Shown: piece after piece, positions 35,626 to 58,320 of the stretch
Numbering within the stretch: the first letter of the stretch is position 1
How the letters are laid out: each line of letters begins with the position of its first letter
Translations under genes and position numbers: made by a program
Notes under the pieces: model-generated
What the model was told of the DNA's origin: nothing
The model's database searches: none
What the model saw: only the letters and a program-made list of their open reading frames with translations
Source: Kudoa neothunni
Taxonomy: Eukaryota > Animalia > Cnidaria
Direction: 5' to 3'
NCBI GenBank assembly: GCA_964304625.1
Contig: OZ199838.1
Location: 416,859-480,858, forward strand
Length of the DNA stretch: 64,000 bases

Positions 35626-35798
35626 TTAATAAATAAGAATTAAGAAGTGATACGCATAATAAATGTTGTTAAGATTTTATATATTTTTAGAAAAAAATAA
35701 ATATAAGTTCAATATGAAAAGATACTAAAAGTTATCTATTACAATAATTTTATAATAATATTGGTAACTGATGTAATGGATGATGAATATATCAGTTT

Positions 35799-38700
35799 TT
35801 ATAGATCGTAAGAAATTTCCTTAGAATTCTTTCTGTAAACAACTACACCTATCACAACCAAAAGTGAAATCACGATGGGTATCATTGCATATAATCTAAG
35901 AAAGCTTATCTACAACAAATATGTATATTCTACTACATGTAACTTCCAACAGACCTATCTAATGTCAAACTTGAAAATATAAATGTAAATTACGAATAAC
36001 TATTCTTTGCAGCATCAAAATTGTGATTTTCTTTACTATCTACAATGTTTCTTTTTTATCAGATCATTAAATTAAAATAATTTTACTAAATATAATCTTA
36101 TAAATATGACATGAAAATTGTTGTTACCCTTTCTCAACCTTTTCTACTACTTTTTGAACGATATCATCTACAACAATGTTGGCATATTCACTCCTTATGT
36201 TTTCTCCTTCTATAAATTTTTTATTCCATAAGTTTCATTTATTTAAGTTACTAAAAGTAGATTATTATAATTATATAATAGATAATTGGAATTCTATTAC
36301 CTTTTTATTTTACCAATTCTTGAGTCTTCGCCAAATATATTATTAGAAAATAAGAATTATTTAATAATTTAAACAAAATATATTACATTGAATACTATAT
36401 GGTCTATACAGTGAGTGATCTTTTGCTTTCAATTTCAATATATAATCCTTTTCTATCGATAAATTATTGATGTTAACGACACATTTATTGGCAGAGCATT
36501 CTTCATCATCATTACACCATGTAACAATTTTTCCCTCCTGGTTGTCTACGATTTTTTCCTGAATCATAAACGGACATCTTGAATTGTCATCTTTTCCTGT
36601 GAAATCCACTTTAATTGTCAAGTCACTATCTCCATTCAACGAATGCTTAAGTGAAATACTACCATTTACTAAATAATATTAATAAAACATAAGATTATTG
36701 ATTATGAATACTTGTCTCAACAGAATACTCCTTTTGTTTTTTGCCATCAGATGGTTCGACGGTTACGTTGTAGGTCACTCCCAATTCTAGGTTGACAATT
36801 TTGAACGTAGCATCACATTTATTCTCACATGCTCCCATTCCCTCACACGTAGCCATATATTTTGGATCTGAGACAGCACTTTTTTTAACATAAATTCTAC
36901 AGACCGGCAAATAATTATCATGTCCAAATGGTGTTATTATAGCAAGTGGAATTTTGGATATTTGGTTTCGAATCCTTTGCAGCTAAATCTCCTCCCTCAG
37001 CTAAATATATCGTTAAACATTAGTGTTTAAATATGCTTTTACTTGTTCGGAATGTTATTTTCTTTATATAATCAGAAATCCCAATGTTGGTTACTGTTAC
37101 AGAAACTACATAACTTGTACCCCTCGCAAGCCCATTAATTGAATACGTCGCTGCACAATTAGTATTACATTCACCATTGCTATCACAACGAGGTTTTGTT
37201 TCAGTCGAAAAAGTATTTACTTGGCGTATTTTAATTGTACATTCTACATTAGGTTGACCTGTATTCATATCCTTATACACGTTAAGTCCAGTAAGGGTGA
37301 CTTCCGTGTCCTTAATATCGCTTATATTTATACCACTGTCATTTCCTAAAAGACATTATTTTTATTGTTGAATCCAATACTACTTTTAAAATATTGTTTG
37401 AATCCTTCGGTATCAAACCTTCGTTTAACAATTATTCCAATGTTCTCACTGCCTTCTGTCAAACTGATAATACCATCTTGACAAAGATGGAAACACTCTT
37501 TTTTCTCCTCAGTGCATCCATTCAGAACAGTACTTTGTTGAGTTGGGTCACTTCCATCTACCTTAAATACCTTGATGTGACAAATTTCGCCATTGTATGG
37601 ACCAGGAGAGAATTTTATCTGAAGTCTTCTATTGTTATCCTCAATACCTGAAACAGAATAAATAATCTCAGATTTTAGTGGGGTCTCAGAATTCAAATAA
37701 GTATTATTCATGTAATAGAATATTCCAGGCCATAACAGCGTTGAACTGATATTATAATAACATATGTATCTATCAAATGAGAGCGAAACAGTTTTAACGT
37801 TTGTAGTCTCGGAATAAGTTGATATATCAAATAAAGTCTTTTTTGTACCAATATGTGGATCATCCATCCCGTCATATTGTATATTCCAATCAGTCATTGA
37901 GTTTGATTTGTAAGAGAAATTAACTTTGCCATCAGCATAAGATATTGCATAAGTGTTATCTTGTATGTTATCTATAAAAAATATCGTTGAAATTTATAAT
38001 GTATAAATATTCTTTATTTTAATTACTCATTATTATTGGGAACACTTGCATCTTTTTACATCTTCTGGCTTCTGCGTCGTCTGCGCCGTAACAAACTGAT
38101 ATATATCGATCGACTTTTGAATTAATATATCCGACGTTAAGATCGCTTTTAGTGCATTCCACCAAACAATCATCCCCATCTCCTTCTGTGCAGAGTTGTG
38201 GCTTTATAAATTCAGTTCCTGCAAAATTAGCCATTTTTATCACACACTTTGCTGCGGAAAAATCTTTCAATGTAACGGAAAATTTCTCAATATCTACATC
38301 CGAAGATTTATAAACTTTTGTTCGAGTTTTCCACGTCGAATAAAAGCTATAAATGTATGTCAATTTAAACCTCTGTGTAAATGTTACCTGGTATCGATAG
38401 CTTGAATGGTGACGATTTTTGATCTGCATAAATCATCAACCTGTAGTTATATTTGTTATCGTATATATCATCAAATTCAATTTGGACGCATTTTTTGACA
38501 TCATTACTATTATCACATCCAATACAAGACTTTATTATTCTCGTGGGTGAAGCTATTTGAAGATAATAAAAATAATATGACACTATTACTTTCGTTTGTT
38601 TCATGTTTATATAACTGATAGTAACATTTTGTAGTGCTTGCGTCATTCATATTTCCTTTTGGTTGTATTATGAGCTTGTTCTTCTTGGTATTAGTTGAAA

Positions 38701-41700
38701 CTTCAAATTCAATTTGTTCACCAACTATTGATTAATTAATTAAATATGTAAATAATTCCCATTACTGGTTTTTTTGTTAAAAATTTGAGTGCCATACGTT
38801 CCACTAGGAACAATTTTCAATTCATACGTAGTATAGAAATTAAGCCCAATGATGTCGAACTGTGATTTGCACGATTTTACGCACAACACATTATCTGCAC
38901 AAATTGCAGGATAATATAAATCACTTTTCTCTTTTATGTAGATGGTACAAATATTTTCTGGAGCCGCTAAATTTTGATTAATTGTGATTCCATTCGCGCT
39001 GGCAGAGATTGAATCCTCTCTAATTAAAAGTTGTTGGTTTTGAGCTGAAAATATGTTTAAAATAACTTTTAATCTGACTAAATACTTATTTTGTGGAAAA
39101 AATATTTTCTTGGTGAGTAATTAGGTATACCCGTTATGGTCACCATAATATCATTATGTAAATAAGTTGGATCAGGCTCAATTTGAACCTTCCCAAAGCT
39201 ACAATCGGGCGATGAACCACCTACATCTTTCCTCCCGTTTTCAGTAACTAGTGGAGCGTATGAGTTCCATAAGTTTATCGTGCATGCAACAGGCGGAGGA
39301 GAAATTTCTCCACCATCTTCATTTTTATCTTTCCCCCTAATGTTTATTTGAATTTTATTTTCAACTGTTGTCGCAGGAACATCGTCACCATGTTTCACTA
39401 AAATATTTTGTGTTATTTATTAAATATATCAAAGTCATACGTATGTGTATATTATTTTGATAACCGATAGTAGGTTTCATTCCTAGTTTTAGCACCCTTA
39501 TTTTAACCGCCTTTACACTCGGCTGCACATTTCCAAATGTATAGTTGTTGCACAAACTGAAGAAACAATTTTCTTGATTATCACATCGATTCGAAAAAAA
39601 ACTGTTTGAATTTGCCGCTGTGGCGTCTATCCATTCGAATGTGCACATTTCAGACGGCTCTGGATTAGTAAGTTTAACTGTAAATGTATCTTTTTGTTCA
39701 ACATTATTTAATTCGTAATAAAATCTACTTAAAAAGGGAGCTTGATTTTTAACAAATGTATTGTCATAGAAATAATGGAAATCAAAATATTCAGGGCAGC
39801 TTATATAATAATCTTTGACTAACTCATCAAATTGAATCGAATAACTTTCAACTTTGTTATGGGTGTCGCAAGATTGTGGTTGATTCACAACAATTTGTTT
39901 TTTGGTATCCTTGAATGATTTGCATTTTAATGGGCATTTATTTAAACCCAATTTTATATTGTCGCCTTCTAATTTAGCTGTGTGGGTAATTTCTTCGTAA
40001 TGATCTTCAAAAAATGATTTAATTCATAAAAAAATTATTTAATACCTATATAGTATGAATAGACCTTTCCTTCATTAAAAGGGACGTTTTTTGTCGTTGG
40101 TATTATCGATTTTTCTTGTTCAAATGTTGAACGTGATGGTGTTTGATTTATTATCACCCCTGGGTCGCCGTTATTTCCTATAAGTGGTCCTTTCGTATTG
40201 CTGCTTCCTGAAGGCAGGACTTCGCCAAGTGATTGCAATCTTGCAATAATTTCTTTCTTAATACCCGATTTTTTGGCATCTGTGTCGGCAGTTTTACTGA
40301 CTTGATAAGTGACAGAAATATAATTTGGTTTATTCGGACTATTAGGATCAATTTCGAATTCTGTTGAAAGGACGGTGCATTGTTTTGGCGTTTCCCCACC
40401 GATTCTGTCATCAGAATAACCCAAAAGGTCATCTTTAGATTTTTTGACTGTGCAATGCTTGTTGCTCTTACTAGTTAGTTCATTATTCTTGAATTTTACC
40501 TTGTACTTTCGTGCAGATTTATTGTAATATAATACCATATCCTGATTACCTTCATCGATACCACCTATAAATAAAAAGTTAATATTTCAACAAAATAACA
40601 ATTACATTCTATGTTTTTTTCTGTTGGGTTGGAATAACCAACATTTATAACAACTAGTTTATAGGTAACTTCGCAACTGAGAGAAGCCCATGAGAAATCT
40701 ATTGTGTTAGTTCCAGTCGCTATAATGGGATCACATGCGCTATTCAAACAATCCTTGATAATTTTTGTAGATTCTTGTTCCAGTAGAACGTACGCCCAAG
40801 AATTTCCTAATGTTTGACCTGAAGCAGCAGCCACGGTAGCTTTAGTTTTCTTTTCCTCAACAACTTTTGAGGTGGTTATTTCTATCTCGATTCCACCAGC
40901 TATTAAATTTCATTTTCATTAAACTTTACAAATAAATTACTTGATTCCCCAATGTTTTCAATACAGTTATATCCTTCCGGACAAACAGTTATTTTGTACG
41001 TTGTTTTAGGGTCAAGGTTTATAATATTGAATTCAATGTTACAAGCACCGGAACAAAATTCATTAGCTTGACCTTTTTTACATGTAGCAGGATACATCGA
41101 TGTATTGCTTCCAGCAACTGAATAGTAGAGATCACATTTTGCCTGATTAACTCTTTCATCGGAGAATGAACTAGATAGATTTAGAGTTAGTGCATTTTGT
41201 TGATCAGAAGTGGGGGTTATGTTTAGTTCACCAGTTTTTATTACTTGTTCTCCTATATAAATTTAGGAATATAGAGTTAATATTTATCGTTACCTTTAGT
41301 TTTGAAATAGAAATAACGGTGGTAATAATTAACTCCAGGAGAATCTAATGTTGTAAGTCCTTTTATTTTAAGTTTTAAAATATATTCTGTTAGTGGCAGA
41401 AGAGAGCTCAAATTGATTGATTCAAATCGTTTGCAACCACCATCACACGTTACATCGTTCCAGTTATTTTTAATTCCCAGATTTTTCTCCATTATTTTAA
41501 CTTCAAAAATATCTGCTCCATCTACAGCACTAGTCTCGCCTTCATTTCGATTTAAATTAGTTAACTCTACAGTTGCCACGTTCTTTCCAGTTACAGTAAC
41601 AGTAGGTTGACCGGTAGCGACTATAAAATTGATAAGACATATTAGATAGATTAAAATTTACATGTTATAGTTTGAATAAACTCTTTTGATGTTATCTTAT

Positions 41701-42709
41701 CAAAGGGTTTAACGAGTACTTGGGCGAACTTAAAATCTGTCTCATGATATAAGGTAGCTTTGTAGCAAGGTTGAAGACATGGTCCAGCTCTCTTCATACC
41801 CGAACAATTAGAAGAAAAATGAGAGTCATTAATATCTTTTATTCCAAAATAACAAATTTGTGAAGGTTTCGGATTTTGGAGCGTAATTGTATAATACTTA
41901 TTATTATCGTTGTTTTCTTTTGAACCAGTTGCAATAAACCAATCCTCATCAAGGTTTTTTGAACTCAATAAAATTTCTGGCGTTTTTTGATCGACTTCAA
42001 TCACATACGTAGGTTGATATGATTTAGAAGGTAGTGTAATAGATTTTGTTGAAAAAAAGGTTTCCGACGATCCGTGTCTCTGTCTTGAAGCAGAATTTTC
42101 TTTGTCTGTCAATTCGTTACTGTCTTTACTTTGAACTGAAACAGTGAACGTACTAATTGTTTTGGTTGCTGTCAGTAAACTCTTTATGTAAAGATCTATT
42201 TTATTATATTAAAATATGGTCAAATATATTTCCATACCTTTTATGGCAAAAACTTTCTTGATTGGGCATTTTTTTACATCATTACCATCCTTACCTTGAC
42301 ACCATTTTATAAATTTAATGGTTTTAAACTCTGCACCACTAAGATTTAGTTCGACTTTTTTACATTCGTAAGTACACATCTTTAAATTTGTATCCAATTT
42401 CGCATCATTTTGAACATTTGTGCAATTAGGGACAGTGTCAATTTTCGCCCCATTATGGTCATAGTATACGAGAGCGCAATGTTTGAAGCTATTCTCAATA
42501 TTGTACCCAGAAAGTGAAATAATATATTTCTTAAAAGTGTGCGAAAAATTCACTTTCATTATATTATTATCAATATTATCAGAGATCACATTTTTCAAAC
42601 ATAACACTAATAAAGATTAATCTATATAATCTCAATGAAAATTACAAGTTAAAATGACGAGATATATTGTAGAAGCATATCGTTGTCTCAAAGACAATCT
42701 CATCATCAT
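35799..42709 (-). CDS. Giant Cys-rich FN3-like repeat type I membrane protein, copy A (~2,000 aa, ~20 exons)
   Basis: ATG at 42709; signal-like N-terminus; ~40-nt GT-AG introns at the same positions as in copy B; LxPxTxY tyrosine-corner motifs; C-terminal TM MIPIVISLLVVIGVVVY + RKNSKEISYDL*. At least two 1-nt indels (~38308, ~36944). The 3' mini-exons are uncertain. Confidence 0.85.
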
Positions 42710-44099: not shown

Positions 44100-44172
44100 T
44101 ATCTACTAGATATAGAAAGCTGAAGTTTCCGTGTGTGTATAAGCAAGTACGCATGTGCGTCAAAATTTTTTC

Positions 44173-47100
44173 GGTAATGGGGGAGTGTGTAGCCCCTAAA
44201 AATCACTATCTTTCGCATGTTCCTTCTTTCTAATTTTTCACAATTGTTTATAATAAAATAATACCGATTGCATAGATTCGGCTCAAAATAACAACTTATA
44301 AACTCTAACAATTCTTAACCCGAACACTGTCGGATGCACGTGCAATCTCCATCCTGTGACAATAATCATTGAATTTTCTCTTATTTTCGAATTATCCATT
44401 ACTTTCATGATTTATTATTGAACATAATAATTTAATTTCTTTATTTGAACAATATATAAACTTTGCTAATAAAGTAACGGGTTAGCTTAGCACGTGTTAT
44501 GGAAATGGATACGTTAAGTTTTCTAGGAGATGACGATTTTTCATTGATTAATGATCCCATGAAATTATTTAATGCATTGTTACATAAAGGTTATCTTCGT
44601 TCTCATCCTCATAGGTGCTCTAAATGTTATAATTTTAAATGTTTTTCATTAACAAATCGAAAATCAAATGTCAGAAGGCCTATGTCAAAAATGACATCGT
44701 ACAAACGGAATGATTATGATTTTATGCTTTGCTATTTTTGTAAAAAGTAATAACGTTGTCTCTAAAAACCACCTTAACCCTTCGTCGTACGCAAATAACT
44801 TTACGAGGTTACACGCATGGGGTCCATTGAACCACATCAAAAAGAAACTGTTATTTAATATTAATAAATAAAGAAATCAATTATTTTTTAAACAGTTATT
44901 GCAAATGATATTTAAATGTATTTTAAAGACAAATTTTGAGCATTTCTGACAACTTGTTCTTGTTTTTTTATCATGTAGACGGGTGCATAAATAACAACTT
45001 CATTTGTTAACGAGCTAGCTTTTTGGATTTCTACTAATTTTAAGTTTAAAAAAATTATCAATGTATTAACCTTTTTTATTCAACTCAGGCTCTATTAATT
45101 GCATACTCAACGACTTTAAAAACTGCTTCCGACGAATAATTTTATCGGTCTTCATGCAATATATAACGTATGCATTTATTGCTACAATATCTAGAAGTGT
45201 ATGAAATATGACAACAGGCCATCTTCTTGTAATTCGATAAGTAGAGTAGTTCCCGCACATTTGTTCTATTGTATCAACTCCACCTTTTGTTGAATTGTAA
45301 AAAGAGACGATCTCTGGTTGCTTTTTAGGATGGCTCAAATCAACAGTGTAACGGCTTTGTTTCATTTGGGAACATAAGACACTAACGTTAGATCTTTTGT
45401 AAATGTAAAATAAGATGAGTATTATTCACGTGTTTTTGAAACCAGGAATTCAGGAGGTATTTCCTTCTTGTTTTTTCTAATGATACCACAAGCAATTATT
45501 CCATTCATTAATAATTCCTAAAACAATCAAACTGATGTAAGCTAGTTGTCAACAGTGATGTTTCTTCCTGAGCCCAGAATTGGTTGAATCAGGTACATAA
45601 TTAAACTATGGGGTGAGTTGTCAACTTTATTTGGGGCATTATTCTGGGCTCCCCAGGTAAACTTCAAGATTAAGGGTGTAAAAAGTTTTAGAATCACACA
45701 GGTTAAAAATCTTAATCCCATATTTCGCTGGCTTAGAAGGCATATACTGCTTAAAAATACAGTGACCCCGGAATGATCCAAGCATCTCATCGATCGTCAA
45801 ATATTTGGTGGGTATATAATATTTGATGAAATTAGAATTTATTTGATTAAAAATATCTCTGATTTTTGACATTTTATCTTGATTATTTTCATTGGAATTA
45901 CTTGAACCGATTGCAAAACGTAAACATGTTTTTAACAAAGAAAATCTATTCTGGTTGAATATTTTTTTGCAAATTGGAAAATCGAAGTCGTCATCTGCCT
46001 ATAGTTCATTCAAATGAGTAAGATTAGCTTTCTTCACGCCAAAAAAATAGTGCATACCAATGTAAGCTTTTAATTCACACATATCAAATGCCATACAATC
46101 TCGCGATCGTTTGTAATTTGGTTGGATATTTCGAAGGTAGTAATTGATACATTGCAATATTTCAGTTAATATATTCTCAGTGATAAATAAACCCCAAATT
46201 TAAGACTCTGATTCCACATCATCAGGAATTTTTACTCCATGTTTATCCGTTATAATGTCGTGTTTTCTCTTTCTTGAAAATAATCCCACAGGTTTTGAGC
46301 TCCATTCAAAATTTTTAGAGTATAACCAATGTTCACTATCATCTAAACCATTTATTTAAGGAATATTTATTTATTTATTCTATTCTATTATATTACTTTT
46401 TCATCATAACAATCATCAAAATCAGAATAAGTACTGCTCGTGTCCGAGTCTGATGAAAACAAATCATCAAAATCATCGCTTAAAAATTTTCAAAAGTCTA
46501 TTTCCTATTTTCATTTTGAAGAAAACGTAAAAAACCATGATTTTTTTCAATTTTAATGTTACCATAAAAAACACAACGATAGCTGTTTGCAGATTGAAAT
46601 CAGGTGAGGTCCATTGGACCTCATGCTTGTCACGGAGGGTTAATGGGATTTAAATGCAAAACCAAGGTATCTTCGAGAAATGGTATATTCCTTTCTATTT
46701 CAAATTGTCATGTTCCATCTCATAACCTGACGGTCAAAAAAATTTGTAAAATTGTTTACTGGTCCATGGATAATTCTATTTTATCCGCCTCCGAAATGAT
46801 TCATTCCGACAAGAAAACGGTGGCTATGTCGTTTACGAAGTTTCGAGATATTTTCATCCAGAACTTTAATCAACGATCCAAATTTTGCGTAGAAGGTTTC
46901 GTGGTAGAAATAGATGAAACTCCTCTCAAGGGAAAACAAAAAATTAACCGTGGCCGGTATTTAAAAGGAGATGTTTGGAAGACGTCTCCGAACAAAGAAT
47001 TTGTTGATCTAAGTGATTATCTCTATTATTTAATGCGCCATATTTCGTTATTATGGCTTGCTATACTTTCGATCTTATAGCTATCGATGATATGAGCGGA

Positions 47101-47757
47101 AGTCAATATGAGCCATCAGAGAACAAAGTGTCGGATAATTCCTCAAGTAATATACGATTACCTTGTTCAATTTATTTAAGCATATAAATTCAGCAAAGAG
47201 AGAAAAATACGGTAACCGTATTGACGGGCCGTGGATATTTGATTTGGCACTTTGTCATGTCGACGACAATAACAAAAGGTGGCTGAAGGAGGTTCGATAC
47301 TTCTACGTCGAAAAAAGAAATTCCGAAACCTTAACCGAAATTATCAAGAATGAAGTCATTTCTGGGTCGACCATTTTTAGTGATGAGTGGTCTGCCTACA
47401 ATAGTTTATCATCACTTGGTTATAATCATATAAAAATTAATCATTCTATAGAATATGTTCGCGATGGGTTTCACACTAATACCATCGAGGCCTGCTGGGG
47501 AAGACCGAAAACAAAATTCCTAAGAATCAAGAGAGGAGAGAAAAAGAAAATTCAATGTTTATTGTCACACGATAGAGATTGGACGTGCATCCGACAGTGT
47601 TCGGGTTAAGAATTGTTAGAATTTATAAGTTGTTATTTTGAGCTGAATCTATGCAATCGGTATTTTTTTATTTTATTATAAACAATCGTGAAAAAATTAA
47701 GAAGAAGGAACATGCGCAAGATAGTTATTTTTAGGTGCCACCCCCCTCCCCATTACC
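44173..47757 (+). mobile_element. Merlin transposon A, interrupted by piggyBac
   Basis: 8-bp TSD ATTTTTTC (44165-44172 and 47758-47765); ~170-bp imperfect TIRs starting GGTAATGGGG; transposase remnants CSKC, VVEIDE, RIDGPW, SDEWSAY and HTNTIE. Confidence 0.93.
44778..46639 (-). mobile_element. piggyBac element with decayed transposase, nested in Merlin A
   Basis: TTAA at 44774-44777 and 46640-46643; CCCT...AGGG ends; TIDEMLGSFRG, KPAKYGIK and YNSTKGGVD motifs. Confidence 0.92.
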
Positions 47758-47878
47758 ATTTTTTCCTTATAGAGAGATATTTGTGAAATTTGTTAAAAGT
47801 CACAATGTTTCAAAAAATTTTCAAATCATTTTTACACTACAAAATGTTCCAAAAAGTATTTATAAAATAGTGATTTTG

Positions 47879-50300
47879 GGTAATGGGGGAGTATCCAGCT
47901 CCAAAAATTCGGCATCTTCCCGTGCACGCGCATTCCCGATTGTTTTATAATTTAATTCACAACATTTTTAAAATATTGAGTGATCACAAATCAGACCAAA
48001 ATTTTTATTCTAAAGAGTTGCAAAAAATCACACTTCGGCAACAATCGGACAGCGCGCAATGTAATGCGCATACCCTTTCATAACCTTTTTTGGCCTAATT
48101 TGTCATAAATAACTCATGAAACTTATATTTTTAATTTTTATAATATAATCAAATATGTTCTCGCGATTAAAGAATCACACAGGATAGGAGATATTTTATT
48201 GAGTGGTGTTTTGAATTTTCGATAATTATAGATGTAATAGTAACTGCTATATTTATATCTCACGTCAAATTTAAAAATTTATATGTTTTTATAATTTAAT
48301 CCGATTAACAACAGTTTTTTCGATGGCGGATTTTTCACTTCAGCGTCAATTTTATAAACTTTTGTTTAATGTGAGTGCTCTATTTACTTACCTAGCGAAT
48401 AAGGGTCTATTACAAAAAATCCTGATCGGTGCAAGAATTGCCACAGGTATAACACTCTACGCCTCCAAGTTACAACGAGAAAAAGAAACAATACTTCAAT
48501 CGATCTTTGTGACGATGATATTGAGAAATACTCGTATACATGTTCAAAGTACTTTTATTTTATGTATAGTTTTTAAAATATTAATTTTAGGAGTGATTGT
48601 AGAACGCATTTTTCACCCAGGGCCTCTACCTTCTTTAGCATCAATAACGCGATGGGGACGAATGTATCCAAATTAGCAGTGTCTCAGCTATTTGAGTTAA
48701 TATACCTTTGGTGTATTGAAGAACAAAGATGCAGGGTGGTAGCATTAACTCAAATAACCGAGAAAACCATTACATTTTGGTATTCAGTGTTGAGGAATAT
48801 TTGTTATAAAATGTTCCAACGACGCGAGAAAATGGGCGGAGAAAATCGAATCGTCGAAATTGACGAATGTTTATTAAGAGGTCGCCGTAAAACCGGGGAA
48901 GATTTTTAAGCATAGACAAATGGTTGGCCACACCTAACTATTTCTTAAGGAGTAGGTTATTCCTTGGAGCGATTCCTTTGAGACGTCAGCTGAGAAATGA
49001 AAGGTATGGTTACAGAATAAACGGCCCTTGGGTTGTTGGCATTTGCGAATGCTCTGTCGATGAAGATGTAAAACGCAAATTGTTAGAATCAAGATTCTTT
49101 ATTGTCCAAAAAAGGGATAAACGAACGTTGACCCAACTCGTCTTACAGGAAGTTGAAAACGGGTCTACAATCTATACTGACGAGTGGTTGGGGTACACCT
49201 CTCTCCGAATTTACGGCTATAACCATATAACCGTTAATCATTCTAAAGAGTATGTCACTCCAGAGGGTTACCATACTAATACGGTCGAGGTCGTGTGGCA
49301 TCATCTCAAAACAAAACTCATTCGGAAAATGAGCGGTGTGCCACGAAATCAGCTGGATTCCTACCTATATGAATCATGGTCGCGTTCCATTCATAAAGGA
49401 TATTGGAATTTTTTCGAATATATTTTAACAGCGATCGCTACTATTTACCAATTAAATAATAGCTAGCGAAACAAAATATTTGTGTTTTGATTCCTCTCAT
49501 CTTTTATATACTGCTATTTGTCAAAAAACTTAAGAAAACTTTAGATTTTACCATATTAGTATTAACTATAAAATTAAAATTATATTTGCAATAAATATAT
49601 TTGAGATTTCTCGCGTATTTTCGTTTAATGATAATAAATTAAAATATATGTTTATGATTATACGACACATTAACTATGAATTATGGTTATCATGGATCGT
49701 TCCTCAAAGTAGTCAATATATTTGTATAAATCAACATTATATAATTTATGTTTGATTTATTTATAATCTAATTATAAGTAGGTAACGAATTCTTCATTTT
49801 GTTGTTTATAATATAAGGTTTTCAATTTCATCAATAAAGTTTGTACGGTATAACGTTATATATTTAATATTAGTACACCAAAAAAATATATGAACTAAAG
49901 AATAAAATTTTAAGTAACAATTAAGAGTCGTTAACGTAAAAAATGAAAACTTAAGGTTAAAAAACACAATAAATAACTGGCATATATCCTTTCTGTTCAA
50001 TTTCATTAATAATTCAAAGAACATATTTGATTATATTATAAAAATTAAAAATATAAGTTTCATGAGTTATTTATGACAAATTAGGCCAAAAAAGGTTATG
50101 AAAGGGTATGCGCATTACATTGCGCGCTGTCCGATTGTTGCCGAAGTGTGATTTTTTGCAACTCTTTAGAATAAAAATTTTGGTCTGATTTGTGATCACT
50201 CAATATTTTAAAAATGTTGTGAATTAAATTATAAAACAATCGGGAATGCGCGTGCACGGGAAGATGCCGAATTTTTGGAGCTGGATACTCCCCCATTACC
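47879..50300 (+). mobile_element. Merlin transposon B with perfect 283-bp TIRs
   Basis: 8-bp TSD TGATTTTG (47871-47878 and 50301-50308); TIRs 47879-48161 and 50018-50300. Confidence 0.96.
48323..49466 (+). CDS. Merlin/ISXO2-like DDE transposase with one 42-nt intron (48549-48590) and two apparent frameshifts
   Basis: CKNC...CSKSDC zinc ribbon after splicing; VEIDE, GPWVVG, TDEWLGY, VNHS and HTNTVE. Frameshifts at ~48417 and ~48891. Confidence 0.85.
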
Positions 50301-51466
50301 TGATTTTGTCTATTCAAAGTTTGTTAAACAGATTACTTGAGTTCAACAATAGGATTAACGTCTGCTTATGACCTGCTGATGGTTGGTTGAAGTTAACTTT
50401 TTTCCTTATATACTTTATCAAATTTAAATTAGGCGATATCATCTATTTTTATGTATAAGATTGGCGTTTCTATTTGGGTGTTCGTGCAAATACACTCCTT
50501 ATTTGTGGAGTTTAACATATTTGACTTGATAGACTCATTTTGAAGGTTCTTTTAATGGTTTTAGATATGATAAAAAATCTATATATGTTTCTTGAATAAC
50601 AAATTGGTGGAGAACATTAAAATTCCATTCACTGGAGCATTATAATGGAAATATTGCGTCCGTAGATTTCATTAAATCGTCCGCTAAGTTTAACTTTCCG
50701 TGATTAAATTCAATGTAGATGGTTGTACTTTTATTACACCAAATTATTTAAATTGTTTATGTTAAAGCTGGGGCGATTTATAACGGTTTATGGGAAAAAA
50801 TACGTTAAGCTCTTGCCGGGCCAAGCGATGCCAATTTTAGCAATATCAATTAATTTTAGTACGTTATGTTCTATCTCTATTACCTTTCTTATTTTTTATC
50901 TCTTAAAAAGTTAGTGATGCATACGGTTACCGAGCCGGGCCAGAATCCGACTTAAAAATCCTCCGACCCAAAAAATGTTTTAAATGACCGCCGGGATTGG
51001 AACACTCATTCAAAGAAATGATCATAATTTAAATTTCATAATCCAAATCGTTAAAGTATATTGCTTAAACATCTTTAGTTGTTTTGTTTCTATGGGTTAA
51101 TTCGAAACTTCGATATTTGTTTGAATGCCATTAAAAACGTCCCTAGGTGAAATCTTCCCCGAGCAAAGCTGGGCAGTTCGCGCTAATGTTAAATAATTTC
51201 CTGTATATTATATAAAAATAGTTTGAATGAATGAAGAACGTGATAGTTGGGGAATCAGAAATAATCAATAATACTCGAAAGGATGATTGTCTATTCACAT
51301 AAAATTTTGTCATATTTGAATAGTTATTATCTTTTCGTAAGATCGAGGTTGGTAATTTTTTAATTGAATTGGACATATGAATAATTGGCAAGATTAATTC
51401 CTCTATTCATATCGATACAAATTTAAACAGAACATTTTTTGTTAATTCACAACTAATAAGCTAATA

Positions 51467-54400
51467 ATGATGAGATTGTCTTTTAGACAACGATACACTT
51501 CTACAACATACCTCGTCATCTTCACTCGTATTTTTCATTGAGATTATATAGATTATTCGTTATTAGTGTTATGTGCTAAAAATGTGATCTCCGATAATAT
51601 TGATAATAATATAATGAATGTTGATTTTTCGCAAAGTTCAAAGAAATATATTATTTCTGTTTCTGGATACAATATTGAGAATAGCTTCAAACATTGCGCT
51701 CTCGTATACTATGACCATAATGGGGCGAAAATTGACACTGTCCCTAATTGCACAAATGTTCAAAATGATGCGAAATTGGATACAAATTTAAAGATGTGTA
51801 CTTACGAATGTAAAAAAGTCGAACTAAATCTCAATGACCAAGAGTTTAAATCCATTAAATACATAAAATGGTGTCAAGGTAAGGATGGTAATGATGTAAA
51901 AAACTGCCCTATCAAGAGGGTTTTTGCTATAAAAGGTATAATAACGTATTTGCTAATACTTTAATATCATAAAATAGGTCTTTACATAAAAAGTTTGTTG
52001 GCAGCAACTAAAGAAAATAATACATTCATTGTTTCAATCCAAAGTAAACAAAACAGTGCATTAACAATCAAAGGTTCTGCTTCAAGACAGAGACAAGGAT
52101 CGTCGACTGCATTTTATACAATCAAATCAATTAAATTACCTTCTAAATCATATCAACCTACGTATGTGGTTGAAGCCGACAATGTGTCACCAGAAATTTT
52201 ATTGAGTCCAAAAAACCTTAATGAGGATTGGTTTATTGCAGCAGGGTCAAAAGGAATCAAGAGTAATTATTATACAATTACACTCCAAAATCCAAAACCT
52301 TCGCAAATTTGTTACTTTGGAATAAAAGATATTAATGACTCTCATTTTTCCTCCAATTGCTCAGATATGAATAGAGCTGGGCCCTGTCTTCAGCCTTGCT
52401 ACAAAGCAACCTTATATCATGATCAAACTTTTAATTTCGCTCAAGTAATTGTTAAGCCCCTAGACAAGATCATATCCAAAGAGTTTATTCAAACTATCAC
52501 ATGTAAATCGTAATTTATCTAATGTTTCATGTTGATTTTGTATAGTCGCTGGCAGTCAACCCACTATTATTTCTACCGAAAAAGGTGTGGCATCTGTAGA
52601 TTTAACTAATTTGGATAAAAGTGAGGGCAAAAGTAGTGCTGAACGAGAAATATTTATCGCAGAAATTAAAATAATAGAGAAAAATCTGGGAATTAATCAT
52701 AATTGGGAAAATCCCGTATGTAACGGTAGCGGAGAATGTAATAATATTCAACGGATAATTTTGAACTCGCTTATGCCACTAACAGAATATATTTTAAAAG
52801 TTAAAATAATTGGACTTAAAACGTTAGATTCTCTTGAAGTTAATTATTATCACCGTTATTTTTATTTCAAAACTAAAGGTAACTTTAAATACTAACTCTA
52901 TTTATAATTCTAAATAGGAGATGAATTAACAAAAGATGGAAATATTACTCCAGGCATCACTAATAACAAGCATAATGAGCTGACTTTAACTCCATCTAAT
53001 TTATTTACAGATGAAAAAAGGAATGACGCAAAATGTGATCTTTATTATTCAGTCACAGGAAGTGATACCCCGATATATCCTGCCACATGTAAAGAAGGTA
53101 ATGAAAAAAAATTTTGTTCCGGTGCTTGCAACATTGAATTCAATATTATAAACCTTGACCCTAAAACAACGTACAAAATAACTGTTTGTCCGGAAGGATA
53201 TAACTGTATTGAAAACATTGGGGAATCAAGTAATTTATTTATAAAGTTTAATGAAAATGAAATTTAATAGCTGGTGGAATCGAGATAGAAATAACCACCT
53301 CAAAAGTTGTTGAGGAAAAGAAAACTAAAGCTACCGTGGCTGCTGCTTCAGGTCAAACATTAGGAAATTCTTGGGCGTACGTTCTACTGGAACAAGAATC
53401 TACAAAAATTATCAAGGATTGTTTGAATAGCGCATGTGATCCCATTATAGCGACTGGAACTAACACAATAGATTTCTCATGGGCTTCTCTCAGTTGCGAA
53501 GTTACATATAAACTAGTTATTATAAATGTAGGTTATTCTAAACCAACAGAAAAAAACATAGAATGTAACTGCTCTTTTATAGAAATATTAATTTTATATT
53601 TATAGGTGGTATTGACGAAGGTGATCAGAAAATGGTTCTATATTACGATAAATCGAAATCAAAATACATGGTAAAATTCAAAGAAAACGCTTTAACTAAA
53701 AAGGACGTTGAAACATATACAGTTCGAAAATCTAATGATGCCCTTTCGATATATATAAATGCTGGAAAAAATAGTAATCCAATTGAAAAACAATACGCTG
53801 ACCTTAAAACATTTTTCGAAATTGATCCTAGTAGTCAGAATGAACTAAATTATATTTCTGTCACTTATCCAGAGAGTAAAACTATTACTGCTAAAAAGGC
53901 CGATAAATCGGGCATGGATGGGACAATTCTACTTCAAGGAGGCAATGGCAGTAAAAAGACAAGCTCAGGCGAACCCCCTTCGTCATCTTTATCAACTGGA
54001 CAAGAAAAACTACAAAAATCACAGGATGTAAAAACTACTTTTAATGTAGGAAAGGTCTATTCATACTACATAGGTAATATATAATTTCTTTATAAATTTA
54101 ACCATTTTTTAAGATCATTTCAAAGAATTTACTCACAAAGCTGAATTAAAAGACGACGGAATAAAATTGGGTTTAAATAAATGTTCATTAGAGTGCAAAT
54201 CATTCAAGGATACTAAATTGCAAACTAATAGAAAGGAACCACTGACTCAAGAGTCCCCATGTGAATTTGAAAGTTATTTGATTCAATTTGATGAGTTAAT
54301 AAATGACTATTATATAAGCTGTCCAGAATATTTTGACTTTCATTATTTCTACGACAATACATTTGTTAAAAATCATGCCCCAATTTATAGTAGATTTTAT

Positions 54401-57400
54401 TACGAACTAAAAAATGATGAACCAAACAATACATTCATAATTCAATTGGTTAATTCAGAGCCATCTGAAATGTGTACATTCGAATGGGATAGACGCCACA
54501 GTGGCAAATTCAAACAGTTTTTTTTCGAATCGATGTGATAATCAAGAAAATTGTTTCTTCAGTTTGTGCAACAACTATACATTTGGGAATGTGCACACGA
54601 GTGTAAAGGCCGTTAAAATAAGGGTCCTAAAACTAGGAATGAAACCTACTATCGGTTATCAAAATAATATACATATACGTATGATTTAGATCTATTTAAT
54701 AGATAAGATAAAATGTTTTAGTGAAACACGGAAATGATGTTTCTGTGAAAACAGTAGATACAAAAATACAAATTAACCTTTTTGGAAAAAATAAAGATGA
54801 AGATGGTGGGGAAATTGCTGGTGGGGCTGCTAAATGCTCAGTAAAGTTTTGGAACACATACGCACCATTAGTTACTGAAACTGAAAGGAAAGATCCAAAT
54901 GGTTTATCGCCTTCTTGTAGCTTTAGGGAGGTTCAAATTACTCCTGCCCCAACACATTTGCATAATGATATAATGGTAACCATAACTAATATACCTAATT
55001 ACTTACCAAGAAAGTACTTTTTACATAAAATAAGTATTTAATAAGATTAAACGTTATTTTAAATATATTTTCAGCTCAAAACCAACAGCTTCGCATCCAA
55101 GATAATTCAGTAATACCTACAACTAATGGTTTCACACTTCCCCGAAATTCAGAAACTTCAGGAAAAATTTGTACCATTTACACTAAAGAGAAAAGTGACT
55201 TATATTATCCTGCAATATGTTCAGAAAATGTGTTGTGTGTAAAATCGTGTGACTCAAAGTTCGACATCATTGGGCTAAACTCTGGTACTACCTACGATCT
55301 CAAAATTGTTCCTAGTGGAAGTTATAACACTCAAATTATAAAAAAAAACACAAGTGACAACCATTATTTTATATATGCAATGAGTGAGTAAGTAATAAAT
55401 AGGCGGTGAAACAATTCAATTTGAAGTCTCAAATGAGACTACAAAAAAAAAAACTCATAATACAAACAAAAAATTCTTCCGATAGAATTAGCGATAAAAA
55501 CTGTTACTATCAGCTATATAAACATGAAACAAACGAAAGTAATAGTGTCATATTATTTTTATTATCTTCAAATAGCTTCACCCACGAAAATAATAAAGTC
55601 TTGCATTGGTTGTGATAATGGTGAGGATAAAAAATGTGACAATATTCAATTTTTGGGCGGTATATACGATAATAAGTATAACTACAGGTTGATGATTTAT
55701 GCTCATGAAAAATCCTCACCATTTAAGCTATCGATACCAGGTAACTTCTACCAAAAATCCCAATTGACATATATTTATAGCTTTTACTCGACGTGGAAAA
55801 CTTGAACAAAAGTTTATAAAGTCTTCGGGCAAAGAAACCGAGAAATTTTCCGTTACATTGAAAGATTTTCCTAATACCAATAAGTGTGTAATAAAGATAG
55901 TTAATTTCGCTGGGACTGAACTTAATAAACCACAACTCTGTGCTGGTGAAAATGGTGATTGTTTAGTGGAATGCACCCAAGTTGATCTAAACGTCGGATA
56001 TATTGATTCAAAAGTTGTTCGATATATATCAGTTTGTTATGGTGCAGACAAAGAAGAGGCCAAAACTTGTAAAAAAGTTCAAGTGTTCCCAATAATAATG
56101 AGTAATTAAAAAAAATATTTTATTTGAAGAGTAAATAATATTTATAGACTTCAAACAAGGTAACACTTATAAAATATCTTATACTGACGGCAATGTTAAT
56201 GTCTCTTACTTATCAAACTCAATAACTGATTGGAATATACAATATGATGGAAAGGATGATCCGCACAGTGACACAGTCAAGACCAGCTTTAATATGGAAA
56301 CGTATTCTGATACTCCACAAGATAAATCTGCTGCTCTCGCAATTGATAGACATATAAGTTATTATAATATCAGTTCAACGCTGTTATTGGCCTGGAATAT
56401 TCTATTACATGAATAATACTTATTTGAAATCTGAAATTCCTCTTAAATCTCAGATCATTTATTCAGTTTCAGGTATTGCTAATAACAATAAAAAACTCAG
56501 AATAAAATTCTCTCCTGGTCCATACAATGACGAGATTTGTCACATCAAAGTATTTAAGGTAAGTGAAACTGGCGCAGATCAACAGAGTATTGTTTTGAAT
56601 GGTTGTACCGGGGAGAACAAAGAATGCTTTCAGCTTTGTCAAGATGGTATCATCAGGTTGACGGAAGAGGGTGATAAAGTTGGAATAATTGTAAAACGAA
56701 GGTTTGATACTAATGGATTCAAACAATACTTTAAAAGTAATTTTATATTCAACTTTAAAAATAATGTCTTTTAGGGAATGACAATGGCATAATTATAACA
56801 GAGATTAAGGATACAGAAGTCACTCTTACCGGACTTAACGTCTATAAGGACATGAAGACTGATGGCAATAATTCTGGGTGTGCAATTAAAATTCGCCGAG
56901 CAAATACTTTTTCGACTGAAACAAAAGCTGGATGTAAGGACAGTGTTGAATGTAGTACTAGCTGTGAAGGGCAATACATTATTAATCGCCTTCAAGCCGG
57001 TACAAATTATGTGGTTTCTGTCACAATTACCAACATTGGAATTACTAATTATATTAGGAAGACAACATTCCGAACAAGTAAAAGCATATTTAAACACTAA
57101 TGTTTAACAATATATTTAGCTGAGGGAGGAGATTTAGCTGCAAAGGATTCGAAACCAAATATCCAAAATTCCACTGCTACAATAACACCATTTGGACATG
57201 ATAATTATTTGCCGGTCTGTAGAATTTATGTTAAAAAAAGTGGTGTCTCAGATCCAAAATATATGGCTACGTGTGAGGGAATGGGAGCATGTGAGAATAA
57301 ATGTGATGCTACGTTCAAAATTGTCAACCTGGAATTAGGAGTGACCTACAACGTAACCGTCGAACCATCTGATGGCAAAAAACAAAAGGAGTATTCTGTT

Positions 57401-58320
57401 GAGACAAGTATTCATAATCAATAATCTTATGTTTTATTAATATTATTTAGTAAATGGTAGTATTTCACTTAAGCATTCGTTGAATGGAGATAGTGACTTG
57501 ACAATTAAAGTGGATTTCACAGGAAAAGATGACAATTCAAGATGTCCGTTTATGATTCAGGAAAAAATCGTAGACAACCAGGAGGGAAAAATTGTTACAT
57601 GGTGTAATGATGATGAAGAATGCTCTGCCAATAAATGTACCGTTAACATCAATAATTTGTCGAGAGAAAAAGATTATATTTTGAAATTAAAAGCAAAGGA
57701 TTACTCACTCTATAACAAATATAGTATTCAGTGTATATATATTTTGTTTAAATTATTAAATAATCCTTATTTTCTAATAATATATTTTGCGAAGACTCAA
57801 GAATAGATGAAATGAAAGGGTAATTAAATTCCAATTATTTACTATATAAATAAAATAATTTATTTAGTGAATTAAATAAAAAATCCTTGTGGAATAAAAA
57901 ATTTATAGAAGGAGAAAACATAAGGAGTGAATATGCCAACATTGTAGTAGATGATATCGTTCAGAAAGTAATAGAAAAGGTTGAGAAAGGGTAAAAACAA
58001 TTTTTCATGTCATATTTATAAGATTTTATTTAGTAAAATTATTTTAATTTAATGATCTGATAAAAAAGAAACATTGTAGTTAATAAAGAAAACCACAATT
58101 TTGATGCTGCAAAGAATAGTTATTCGTAATTTACATTTATATTTTCAAGTTTGACATTAGATAGGTCTGTTGGAAGTTACATGTAATAGAATATACATAT
58201 TTGTTGTAGATAAGCTTTCTTAGATTATATGCAATGATACCCATCGTGGTTTCACTTTTGGTTGTGATAGGTGTAGCTGTTTACAGAAAGAATTCTAAGG
58301 AAATTTCTTACGATCTATAA
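51467..58320 (+). CDS. Giant Cys-rich FN3-like repeat type I membrane protein, copy B (~2,000 aa)
   Basis: Introns, all phase 1: 51528-566, 51936-977, 52503-545, 52879-917, 53230-270, 53565-605, 54074-113, 54679-721, 55034-074, 55354-402, 55539-575, 55741-780, 56102-147, 56737-774, 57078-119, 57408-450, 57733-794. Less certain 3' mini-exons follow. Signal MMRLSFRQRYTSTTYLVIFTLLCA; TM + tail MIPIVVSLLVVIGVAVYRKNSKEISYDL*. Three apparent +1 frameshifts (~54487, ~55450, ~56387). Confidence 0.87.

What the first reader, a model, noticed from the sequence alone, without database searches (positions are those of the whole stretch)
35799..58320. Candidate diversifying surface-receptor/antigen system: inverted paralogs with mosaic identity
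Two ~2,000-aa type I membrane proteins alternate between near-identical tracts and strongly diverged segments. Near-identical tracts, including silent sites and introns, are 51668-51830, ~53110-53506, ~57066-57650 and ~57890-58370 versus copy A. Diverged segments with many amino-acid changes and in-frame indels include 52560-52760, 53606-54073 and 56850-57000. TM and tail are almost invariant. Patchy homogenisation plus ectodomain diversification is the pattern of gene conversion seen in variant antigens and allorecognition loci. I recognise no named family. Function (immune evasion, host adhesion or self-recognition) is inference.
Basis: partly seen in the sequence, partly recalled or inferred. 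Interest (0 to 1): 0.88.

Follow-up and report, generated by a model that had tools for sequence, protein, structure and literature searches.

The report
Mosaic FN3 surface-gene pair, myxozoan
Two neighbouring, head-to-head genes of a fish-muscle parasite (most likely Kudoa neothunni) belong to an undescribed family of at least 60 giant surface-protein genes that swap 150-600-base patches by gene conversion, but both copies here carry frame-breaking indels and nothing yet shows the family is used for immune evasion.

Summary
The mosaic is real. Copy A (35799-42703, minus strand) and copy B (51470-58320, plus strand) share three 98-100% identical tracts (979 nt, introns included). The rest is 60-85% identical.

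They are not a closed pair. They belong to about 18 close paralogs, within a family of at least 60 loci on all three chromosomes. Every member is a patchwork of the others. B is 100% identical to a chromosome-3 gene over about 600 nt where it is only 84-89% identical to A. Permutation tests and segment trees support non-allelic gene conversion.

Intact relatives encode about 1,900-aa type I membrane proteins with 18 exons. They have a signal peptide, about 18 Cys-stapled FN3-like modules, a transmembrane helix and a 12-aa tail. No Pfam family passes threshold, and a search of 1.84 billion proteins found nothing close.

As assembled, A and B each carry three single-base frameshifts, so they are probably pseudogenes. 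dN/dS is 0.2-0.7 per exon, so diversifying selection is not shown.

The genome matches the published Kudoa neothunni assembly, a myxozoan. No expression data could be obtained. Earlier notes of this scan describe the same superfamily and paralog conversion on other DNA of this genome.

The parts
51470..58320 (+). Copy B, 18-exon gene model. Exons: 51470-51527, 51567-51935, 51978-52502, 52546-52878, 52918-53229, 53271-53564, 53606-54073, 54114-54678, 54722-55033, 55075-55353, 55403-55538, 55576-55740, 55781-56101, 56148-56765, 56810-57077, 57120-57407, 57451-57745, 58224-58320.
   Evidence: The consensus of splice-chain models for 20 paralogs was mapped through a MAFFT alignment. All splice sites are GT-AG. 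Introns are 37-49 nt and mostly phase 1, and the last intron is 478 nt. The same model gives an uninterrupted 1,912-codon frame in paralog L024.
35799..42703 (-). Copy A, same 18-exon structure. Exon 1 is 42703-42646 and exon 18 is 35895-35799.
   Evidence: Exon coordinates were mapped from B, and all splice sites are GT-AG. Frameshifts lie in exons 13, 16 and 17.
51186..51469 (+). Conserved upstream region of B (promoter and 5' UTR candidate). The A counterpart is 42704-42990.
   Evidence: Mean pairwise identity among 18 paralogs is 0.82 here. It is 0.57 immediately upstream.
54486..54486 (+). B-specific +1 insertion in exon 8.
   Evidence: Exon 8 is 565 nt in B and 564 nt in 17 of the other 19 paralogs. 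The site is not in a homopolymer.
55443..55453 (+). A11 homopolymer in B exon 11, where the frame shifts by +1.
   Evidence: The reading frame matches the family upstream and downstream of the run in different frames. This could be a homopolymer consensus error.
56387..56387 (+). B-specific +1 insertion in exon 14.
   Evidence: Exon 14 is 618 nt in B and 617 nt in 15 of the other 19 paralogs.
38309..38309 (-). A-specific 1-nt deletion in exon 13.
36945..36945 (-). A-specific 1-nt insertion in exon 16. It lies inside a tract that is otherwise 98-100% identical to B.
36384..36384 (-). A-specific 1-nt deletion at the end of exon 17.
   Evidence: It breaks the majority donor model. It would be intronic only if an upstream donor were used, and that donor is mutated in A.
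53109..53529 (.). Conversion tract exclusive to A and B (B coordinates). The A counterpart is 40641-41060. It covers the end of exon 5, intron 5 and exon 6.
   Evidence: It is 99% identical between A and B, and the next best copy in the whole genome is 82%. 177 consecutive family-polymorphic sites are identical, against a permutation maximum of 48. A and B are sisters with support 1.0 only in this segment and in 57060-57480.
51659..51836 (.). A-B near-identical tract in exon 2 (B coordinates). The A counterpart is about 42337-42514.
57062..57560 (.). A-B near-identical tract (B coordinates) covering the end of exon 15, exon 16 and the start of exon 17. The A counterpart is about 36559-37058.
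   Evidence: 150-nt windows are 97-100% identical. A and B are sisters with support 0.99.
57490..58101 (+). Tract of B identical to paralog L021 on chromosome 3 (C3:6.37 Mb).
   Evidence: 276 consecutive polymorphic sites are identical, against a permutation maximum of 38. A is only 84-89% identical to B over 57590-57815.
53606..54073 (+). Exon 7. It is the most variable exon: one module plus a Ser/Gly/Pro/Thr/Lys-rich linker with length variation.
   Evidence: Its length is 450-543 nt among paralogs. Median identity is 0.36-0.67. dN/dS is 0.67.
57746..58223 (+). Last intron (478 nt). It is more conserved than the coding exons.
   Evidence: Mean pairwise identity is 0.886 against 0.800 for the exons. 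Direct splicing from 57746 to 58224 keeps the frame in 14 of 20 paralogs. A model with three extra introns does so in only 8-9.
58224..58320 (+). Exon 18: a hydrophobic transmembrane stretch of about 20 aa, a 12-aa basic tail and the stop codon.
   Evidence: Mean pairwise identity is 0.919.
44249..47675 (.). Merlin/IS1595-like DNA transposon in the A-B spacer.
   Evidence: It has 134-nt inverted ends at 93% identity. The ORF at 47163-47609 matches DDE_Tnp_IS1595 with E = 3.5e-16.
47879..50300 (.). Second Merlin/IS1595-like transposon, with perfect 283-nt terminal inverted repeats.
   Evidence: repeat I7, 100% identical. The ORF at 48924-49466 matches DDE_Tnp_IS1595 with E = 4.7e-19.

Best explanation
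A and B are two adjacent, head-to-head members of a lineage-specific multigene family in a myxozoan parasite. The genome matches the published Kudoa neothunni assembly. Intact members encode about 1,900-aa type I membrane proteins. These have a short signal peptide, about 18 exon-sized, disulfide-stapled FN3-like beta-sandwich modules, one low-complexity linker, a transmembrane helix and a 12-residue tail.

Shown: the genes evolve reticulately. Patches of about 150-600 bp, introns included, are copied between paralogs by non-allelic gene conversion, both within the C1:0.34-0.51 Mb cluster and between chromosomes. Each gene is therefore a different mosaic. The 5' upstream 280 bp and the 3' end (last intron plus the transmembrane exon) are kept most alike. 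A and B exchanged three patches directly and took other patches from other paralogs. Both now carry three frame-breaking 1-nt indels, so they are most likely recent pseudogenes that still take part in exchange.

Inferred: the proteins sit on the parasite surface, and conversion, with pseudogenes as donors, maintains a varied repertoire of host-facing adhesion or surface molecules. I put about 0.9 on the gene-conversion and family part, about 0.7 on pseudogene status, and about 0.5 on a host-interface surface role.
For: - Mosaic. 15 of 153 pairs share 26 tracts at 98% identity or more, median 217 nt and maximum 607 nt.
- Significance: the A-B run is 177 polymorphic sites and the B-L021 run is 276, against a global permutation maximum of 60. 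16 of 153 pairs exceed that maximum.
- Incongruent segment trees with support 0.85-1.0.
- A-B pS is 0.045 in exon 6 and 0.438 in exon 7.
- The 53109-53529 tract is 99% identical only between A and B, and the next best copy is 82%.
- Family size: 85 exon-3 hits and 96 exon-16 hits in the genome, of which at least 60 are full-length, plus 17 full-length copies at 77-85% DNA identity.
- Gene model and integrity.
- FN3 fold: the exon-16 model has pLDDT 78, and every top PDB and Atlas hit is FN3 with TM 0.6-0.7. Exon 3 models as two beta-sandwich domains. A sequence profile weakly hits titin, Dscam and fibronectin FN3.
- Orphan status.
- Independent occurrence: metagenome and SRA fragments carry collinear exons 7-9 with about 46-nt introns.
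- Organism: three chromosomes plus a circular mitochondrial genome, 40.2 Mb, 30% GC, about 49-nt introns, and a (TAAACC)n array at exactly one chromosome end, all as in PMC12239612.
Against: - Expression, splicing of the last intron and surface location are therefore unverified.
- The assembly came from about 7x HiFi coverage. At least the A11-run frameshift in B could be a consensus error.
- dN/dS below 1 in every exon gives no sign of selection for diversity.
- Family loci are dispersed and not strictly subtelomeric.
- The signal peptide was judged by eye, not by a predictor.
- Only two exons were folded.
Confidence: 0.8

Rival explanations
1. The family is a structural or adhesive component, for example cell-cell adhesion in the cell-in-cell plasmodium or in spore or valve assembly. 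The patchwork would be ordinary concerted evolution of a tandem and dispersed family, with no role in host immunity. Variation would be neutral.
For: dN/dS is 0.22-0.67 in all exons, and windows above 1 are few and lie mostly in a linker. About half of the close paralogs are disrupted, as expected under birth-and-death evolution. FN3 arrays are typical adhesion and matrix modules.
Against: At least 60 copies of a 1,900-aa protein is a heavy load in a 40-Mb genome for which only 5,316 genes were predicted. The family is undetectable outside close relatives, which points to fast lineage-specific turnover typical of host-interface genes.
Confidence: 0.35
2. The identical tracts are assembly artefacts: chimeric consensus between paralogs in a low-coverage assembly.
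For: The parasite was assembled from about 7x HiFi coverage taken from a host sample. I could not lay reads on the locus.
Against: The assembler was hifiasm-meta working on HiFi reads, with no mapping-based polishing step described. Reads of this type are longer than a whole 7-kb gene, and paralogs that are 80-85% identical are not merged. Tract identity forms a continuum from 90% to 100% rather than being all 100%. The pattern is family-wide and includes inter-chromosomal pairs. Nine paralogs have entirely clean frames over 5.7 kb each.
Confidence: 0.04
3. The near-identical tracts reflect strong local purifying selection on functionally critical segments, not sequence exchange.
For: The 3' end from about 57440 to 58320 is conserved across the whole subfamily.
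Against: In the A-B tracts the family median identity is only 0.72-0.79, and the best third copy is 79-88%. Intron 5 and synonymous sites are identical. Different pairs have their tracts in different places.
Confidence: 0.03
4. The genes are allorecognition or self-recognition receptors of a cnidarian, like Hydractinia Alr, diversified by recombination with neighbouring paralogs and pseudogenes.
For: The organism is a cnidarian. The proteins are type I membrane proteins with beta-sandwich ectodomains. The genes are clustered, include pseudogenes and exchange segments.
Against: The tail is only 12 aa, with no room for signalling motifs. There are about 18 FN3-like modules rather than a few V-set-like Ig domains. 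No population data exist. Myxozoan plasmodia have no known fusion or rejection biology (my own knowledge).
Confidence: 0.05

Closest known systems
Mosaic variant-antigen gene families of unicellular parasites (Plasmodium var/PfEMP1, Trypanosoma brucei VSG, Pneumocystis MSG, Giardia VSP)
   Same: It is a large paralogous repertoire of predicted surface proteins in a parasite. Segmental gene conversion produces mosaic genes. Many members are pseudogenes that share tracts with intact genes. The gene ends are conserved and could anchor recombination.
   Different: The host organism is an animal (a myxozoan cnidarian). The proteins are FN3-like arrays with no sequence relation to those families. 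The loci are dispersed and clustered rather than strictly subtelomeric. Switching or mutually exclusive expression is untested, and dN/dS is below 1.
Candidate variant surface families reported in the myxozoan Sphaerospora molnari (VSP-like, RIFIN/STEVOR-like, ETRAMP-like; bioRxiv 10.64898/2026.02.11.705288)
   Same: Both are expanded lineage-specific membrane-protein families in a myxozoan, proposed as immune-evasion genes. In both cases antigenic variation is suspected but its mechanism is unknown.
   Different: The architectures differ. Those proteins are 300-700-aa CXXC-rich or small two-TM proteins with 10-27 genes per family. Here the proteins are about 1,900-aa FN3-like arrays encoded by at least 60 loci. 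That paper proposes MULE-mediated transfer, whereas I show paralog gene conversion. I found no FN3 family mentioned there or in the Kudoa genome paper.
Hydractinia allorecognition complex (Alr1/Alr2 and Alr-like IgSF genes)
   Same: Both are cnidarian clusters of type I membrane proteins with beta-sandwich ectodomains. In both, diversity is shaped by recombination with neighbouring paralogs and pseudogenes.
   Different: Alr proteins have 2-3 Ig-like domains and long signalling tails. Here there are about 18 FN3-like modules and a 12-aa tail. Sequence or fold relatedness to Alr was not tested.
Canonical metazoan FN3 domain (Pfam PF00041), as in fibronectin, titin, Dscam and cytokine receptors
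   Same: The predicted fold of the exon-16 module is FN3, with TM 0.6-0.7 to fibronectin-derived monobodies, tenascin and NCAM. The E-F strand 'L..T.Y.v.V' motif is shared, and each module is one exon flanked by phase-1 introns.
   Different: The modules fall below Pfam's threshold (best 17.1 bits against a cut-off of 25). They carry 3-4 invariant cysteines per module that canonical FN3 domains lack.

Membership tests
Non-allelic (ectopic) gene conversion among paralogs | Near-identical tracts embedded in a diverged background, extending over silent sites and introns | tested here: met
   A-B pS is 0.045 in exon 6 against 0.438 in exon 7, and intron 5 is identical.
Non-allelic (ectopic) gene conversion among paralogs | Tract lengths exceed chance, given the pairwise divergence | tested here: met
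   With 300 site permutations the global maximum run was 60 polymorphic sites. Observed runs were 177 (A-B), 276 (B-L021) and 328 (L013-L022), and 16 of 153 pairs exceeded the maximum.
Non-allelic (ectopic) gene conversion among paralogs | Phylogenetic incongruence between adjacent segments | tested here: met
   A and B are sisters in 2 of 12 segments. Elsewhere each pairs with a different paralog, with SH-like support 0.85-1.0.
Fibronectin type III domain (PF00041) | Sequence score at or above Pfam's gathering threshold | tested here: not met
   The best score is 17.1 bits (E = 0.0066) against a cut-off of 25, and most exons give no hit. A profile search against PDB sequences gives titin at 2.9e-5 and fibronectin at 2e-3.
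Fibronectin type III domain (PF00041) | Seven-strand beta-sandwich fold matching solved FN3 domains | tested here: met
   The exon-16 model has pLDDT 78. All top Foldseek PDB hits are FN3, with TM 0.6-0.7 and probability 1.00. The top Atlas row is an fn3 family. Only one module was modelled at useful confidence.
Type I membrane protein | N-terminal signal peptide, a single C-terminal transmembrane helix and a cytoplasmic tail | tested here: inconclusive
   A basic N-terminus followed by a hydrophobic stretch of about 12 aa spans exons 1 and 2. Exon 18 holds a hydrophobic stretch of about 20 aa and then a basic 12-aa tail. These were read by eye. No predictor or experiment was used.
Antigenic-variation system (var/VSG type) | Large archive of paralogous surface-protein genes, including pseudogenes | tested here: met
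   At least 60 loci. Under the 18-exon model, 9 of the 18 close paralogs (11 of the 20 aligned) are disrupted.
Antigenic-variation system (var/VSG type) | Mutually exclusive or switching expression of members | not testable with these tools
The genome paper reports that very few transcriptome reads map to the parasite.
Antigenic-variation system (var/VSG type) | Surface exposure and recognition by host antibodies | not testable with these tools
   This needs localisation and serology.
Antigenic-variation system (var/VSG type) | Signature of diversifying selection on exposed parts | tested here: not met
   Per-exon dN/dS is 0.22-0.67. 22 of 342 windows slightly exceed 1, mostly in the exon-7 linker, where the alignment is uncertain.
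Allorecognition locus (Hydractinia Alr type) | Extreme allelic polymorphism and homophilic, allele-specific binding | not testable with these tools
   Only a single assembly is available.

The most novel reading that the evidence does not exclude
An animal parasite (a myxozoan) runs a protozoan-style contingency system. An archive of at least 60 giant FN3-array surface-protein genes and pseudogenes is continually reshuffled by segmental gene conversion. Few members are expressed at a time, which lets plasmodia persist in fish muscle despite antibody responses. This would be the first such mosaic variant-antigen system described in Metazoa.
Probability: 0.2. Interest if true: 0.85.

Novelty: new variant of a known kind. 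Interest (0 to 1): 0.62.

Why it matters
How myxozoans survive in immunocompetent fish is unknown. Antigenic variation has been suspected in a few species, but no molecular basis is established. This family is large, orphan and membrane-anchored, and it visibly exchanges sequence among members. That is the genomic signature of contingency gene families in protozoan and fungal parasites, yet here it occurs in an animal and is built from FN3-like modules.

The Kudoa neothunni annotation was made from protein hints alone and predicts only 5,316 genes. The literature and protein libraries I searched contain no description of the family. Defining it therefore gives concrete candidates for expression, localisation and serology studies in Kudoa, which causes post-harvest flesh spoilage in tuna and other fish. 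It also offers a tractable case of inter-chromosomal gene conversion in a compact animal genome.

Tried and rejected
- First splice-chain models used a minimum intron of 45 nt. They produced false introns that hid B's frameshifts. I replaced them with a 20-paralog consensus that allows 37-nt introns.
- A 3' model with three extra introns and two small exons inside 57746-58223 keeps the frame in only 8-9 of 20 paralogs. Half of the paralogs differ there by a 1-nt indel. I rejected it in favour of one 478-nt intron, which works in 14 of 20. Alternative splicing is still possible.
- Pfam scans exon by exon gave nothing above threshold. The ESM Atlas search by features gave no usable hit.
- An exhaustive profile search of 1.84 billion representatives gave nothing below 1e-6. 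One hit was a bacterial DUF11 repeat protein, judged spurious. Two tiny fragments share the Cys motif.
- Nematode origin (Strongyloididae have three chromosomes and about 40 Mb) was rejected. There is no cuticle-collagen N domain, although that search's controls did not ring either. Other notes report minicollagens, and the genome matches the Kudoa paper.
- A transposon-borne gene unit was rejected. The 7.3-kb homology unit has sharp ends but no terminal inverted repeats.
- Simple local inverted duplication of A and B was rejected, because their flanks are unrelated and each matches other paralogs.
- Rfam and tRNA scans of the window found nothing.
I therefore did not use read laying and did not attempt any other route to reads.
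Every search and fold was done exon by exon, by reference. No contig that looked human was met.
Full report
**Observation**

The repeat finder and a MAFFT alignment of 35000-43500 against the reverse complement of 50700-59200 show one long inverted duplicate. It runs from A 35734-42980 to B 51196-58385. Identity in 100-nt bins swings between 97-100% and 37-80%.

With a criterion of 98% identity or more over at least 150 nt, A and B share B 51659-51836, 53109-53529 and 57062-57440. The last tract continues to about 57560.

Composition is about 30% GC. Open stretches in the three frames are linked by very short GT-AG introns.

**Gene model**

I derived an 18-exon model from splice-chain models of 20 paralogs projected onto one alignment.

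- In B coordinates, the start codon is at 51470 and the stop at 58318-58320.
- The introns are 37-49 nt and nearly all phase 1, so one exon corresponds to one or two modules.
- The final intron is 478 nt.
- In paralog L024 (C1:387408-395225) the model gives an uninterrupted frame of 1,912 codons.
- All splice sites in A and B are canonical.

Exon 1 and the start of exon 2 read as a short basic N-terminus followed by a hydrophobic stretch. Exon 18 holds a hydrophobic stretch of about 20 residues, a 12-residue basic tail and the stop codon. The architecture is therefore type I membrane. This was judged by eye and not by a predictor.

I built no joined spliced protein. All searches and folds were made exon by exon, by reference.

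**Both copies are disrupted as assembled**

Each of the following indels is specific to one copy, against 18-19 other paralogs.

| Copy | Change | Position | Exon |
|---|---|---|---|
| B | +1 | 54486 | 8 |
| B | +1 | A11 run, 55443-55453 | 11 |
| B | +1 | 56387 | 14 |
| A | -1 | 38309 | 13 |
| A | +1 | 36945 | 16 |
| A | -1 | 36384 | 17 |

- Only the A11 site looks like a typical consensus error.
- Nine of the 20 aligned paralogs have no disruption over 5.7 kb.
- The other eleven carry between one and five frame-disrupted exons, some with premature stops as well. That is 27 frame-disrupted exons in about 114 kb.
- The published consensus quality of QV 48.5 would predict about two errors over that length.
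- I therefore read A and B as recent pseudogenes, with probability about 0.7. No other in-frame stops have accumulated.

**A and B are not a closed pair**

- One exon (window 51995-52507) finds 85 places in the genome, at least 60 of them full length.
- Exon 16 finds 96 places.
- The whole 7.2-kb gene finds 17 further full-length copies at 77-85% DNA identity.
- Ten of these lie in C1:0.34-0.51 Mb, and A and B are among them. The others are on all three chromosomes.
- In exon 3, A is only 76% identical to B, while three other paralogs reach 81-82%.
- The flanks of A and B are unrelated to each other. Each matches a different paralog: upstream, B matches L013 and A matches L021; downstream, B matches L025 and A matches L024 or L014. 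So A and B did not arise by duplicating each other.

**Gene conversion**

- In 150-nt windows, the nearest relative of A and of B keeps changing.
- B is 100% identical to L021 (chromosome 3, 6.37 Mb) over about 57515-58000, where A is 84-89% identical.
- I ran a GENECONV-like test on 3,974 polymorphic, ungapped sites of 18 paralogs, with 300 site permutations.
  - The longest identical runs were 328 sites (L013-L022), 276 (B-L021) and 177 (A-B, 53242-53505).
  - The global permutation maximum was 60, and 16 of 153 pairs exceeded it.
- FastTree on 12 consecutive segments makes A and B sisters only in 53100-53520 (support 1.0) and 57060-57480 (support 0.99). In the other ten segments neither is the other's direct sister, and in most of them each pairs with a different paralog at support 0.85-1.0.
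- A-B synonymous divergence is 0.045 in exon 6 and 0.438 in exon 7.
- A whole-genome search with 53109-53529 finds 99% identity in A only, and the next copy is 82%. That patch passed directly between the two neighbours.
- Outside the generally conserved 3' end there are 26 tracts in 15 pairs, with median 217 nt and maximum 607 nt.
- Pairs within the cluster share tracts more often than other pairs (8 of 45 against 7 of 108). The chromosome-3 gene L021 is nevertheless a hub.

**Could it be an artefact or local constraint?**

- In the A-B tracts the family median identity is 0.72-0.79 and intron 5 is included, so local constraint does not explain them.
- The genome matches the published K. neothunni assembly. 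It has three chromosome-scale scaffolds of 17.15, 12.04 and 11.05 Mb plus an 18-kb contig, and a total of 40.2 Mb. GC is 30.4% and the median intron is 49 nt.
- The telomeric (TAAACC)n array lies at exactly one chromosome end, the right end of C2.
- That assembly used hifiasm-meta on HiFi reads. No mapping-based polishing is described, but coverage was only about 7x.
- Reads longer than a gene should not yield 200-600-nt chimeras between paralogs that are 80-85% identical.
- Tract identities form a continuum from 90% to 100%.

**What the protein is**

- No Pfam family passes threshold in any exon. The best is fn3 at 17.1 bits against a cut-off of 25.
- A profile of exon 3 from 18 diverse paralogs was run against 1.84 billion representative proteins. 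It gave nothing below E = 3e-6.
- Two small environmental fragments share the module's cysteine pattern.
- A word-indexed search with exon 8 found two fragments. On one of their contigs (L080, from an ENA metagenome), the end of exon 7, exon 8 (66% aa identity) and exon 9 (57%) are collinear and separated by 45-47-nt introns. On the other (L081, from an SRA run), part of exon 7 (41%) and exon 8 (54%) match. The family therefore exists in independent data.
- AlphaFold2 on a 26-sequence alignment of the exon-16 module gave pLDDT 78. All leading PDB and Atlas matches are FN3 domains with TM 0.6-0.7.
- Exon 3 models, at pLDDT 60, as two beta-sandwich domains resembling cytokine-receptor FN3 pairs.
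- The modules share four invariant cysteines, an invariant leucine and an F-strand tyrosine.

**Selection**

Among nine intact paralogs, dN/dS is 0.22-0.67 per exon. Only 22 of 342 15-codon windows slightly exceed 1, mostly in the exon-7 linker, where the alignment is uncertain. Diversifying selection is therefore not shown.

The most conserved DNA is the last intron (0.886 mean pairwise identity) and the transmembrane exon (0.919), against 0.800 for the other exons. A 280-bp upstream block is at 0.82. These conserved ends could be regulatory, or they could serve as homology anchors. This is inference.

**Literature**

The Kudoa genome paper does not mention gene families, surface proteins or fibronectin. 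A 2026 preprint on Sphaerospora molnari proposes other candidate variant surface families and notes that the basis of suspected antigenic variation in myxozoans is unknown. Full-text searches found no description of this family.

**Earlier notes of this scan**

Earlier notes on other DNA of the same genome already describe a Cys-rich FN3-like surface-protein superfamily. One follow-up, s1-682521, describes a gene that is a patchwork of neighbouring paralogs. My result agrees with that on independent loci. It adds the inter-chromosomal exchange, the family census, the pseudogene status of this pair and the identification of the organism.

**Verdict**

It is a family-wide network rather than a two-gene diversifying system. 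The two genes in hand are probably dead copies, and the proposed function remains untested.

Noticed in passing
window 44249-47675 and 47879-50300: Two Merlin/IS1595-like DNA transposons fill the spacer between A and B. The second has perfect 283-nt terminal inverted repeats, which suggests a very recent insertion. Both hold ORFs matching DDE_Tnp_IS1595.
   Followed up: partly
window 1855-2862(-), 5561-6427(-), 20303-21553(+), 24074-25059(+): The left half of the window is rich in DNA transposons. There are piggyBac-type (DDE_Tnp_1_7) and Tc1/mariner-type (DDE_3 with HTH domains) transposase ORFs.
   Followed up: no
window 57746-58223 (B) and 35896-36374 (A): The 478-nt last intron is more conserved among 18 paralogs (0.886) than the coding exons (0.800). 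It contains stretches that stay open in about half of the copies. It could be a regulatory element, an alternative-exon region or a recombination anchor.
   Followed up: partly
window 55443-55453: An A11 homopolymer inside exon 11 of B is where the frame slips by one base. It is either a consensus error or a slippage-prone tract of the kind that switches contingency genes on and off.
   Followed up: partly
L080 (ENA ERZ28624939 scaffold_17303) and L081 (Logan SRR33529766 contig): Short contigs from unrelated public datasets carry relatives of exons 7-9 (L080) and exons 7-8 (L081), at 54-66% aa identity in exon 8. L080 has the same short introns. A second organism or isolate with this family is therefore present in those samples.
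   Followed up: partly
G000:C2:12039536-12040069: A (TAAACC)n telomere-type array lies at only one of the six chromosome ends. This matches the statement in the Kudoa neothunni genome paper.
   Followed up: yes
L025 = G000:C1:480763-488420 (just right of the window): The next paralog downstream of B has a 200-N scaffold gap in its 5' region. Its start and promoter are therefore not assembled.
   Followed up: no
G000: C2:2.58-2.65 Mb, C1:14.50-14.51 Mb, C3:4.48-4.51 Mb, C3:8.73-8.75 Mb: Weak exon-level hits (E 1e-4 to 1e-6, 26-37% identity) point to further, more distant FN3-like subfamilies arranged in tandem arrays.
   Followed up: no
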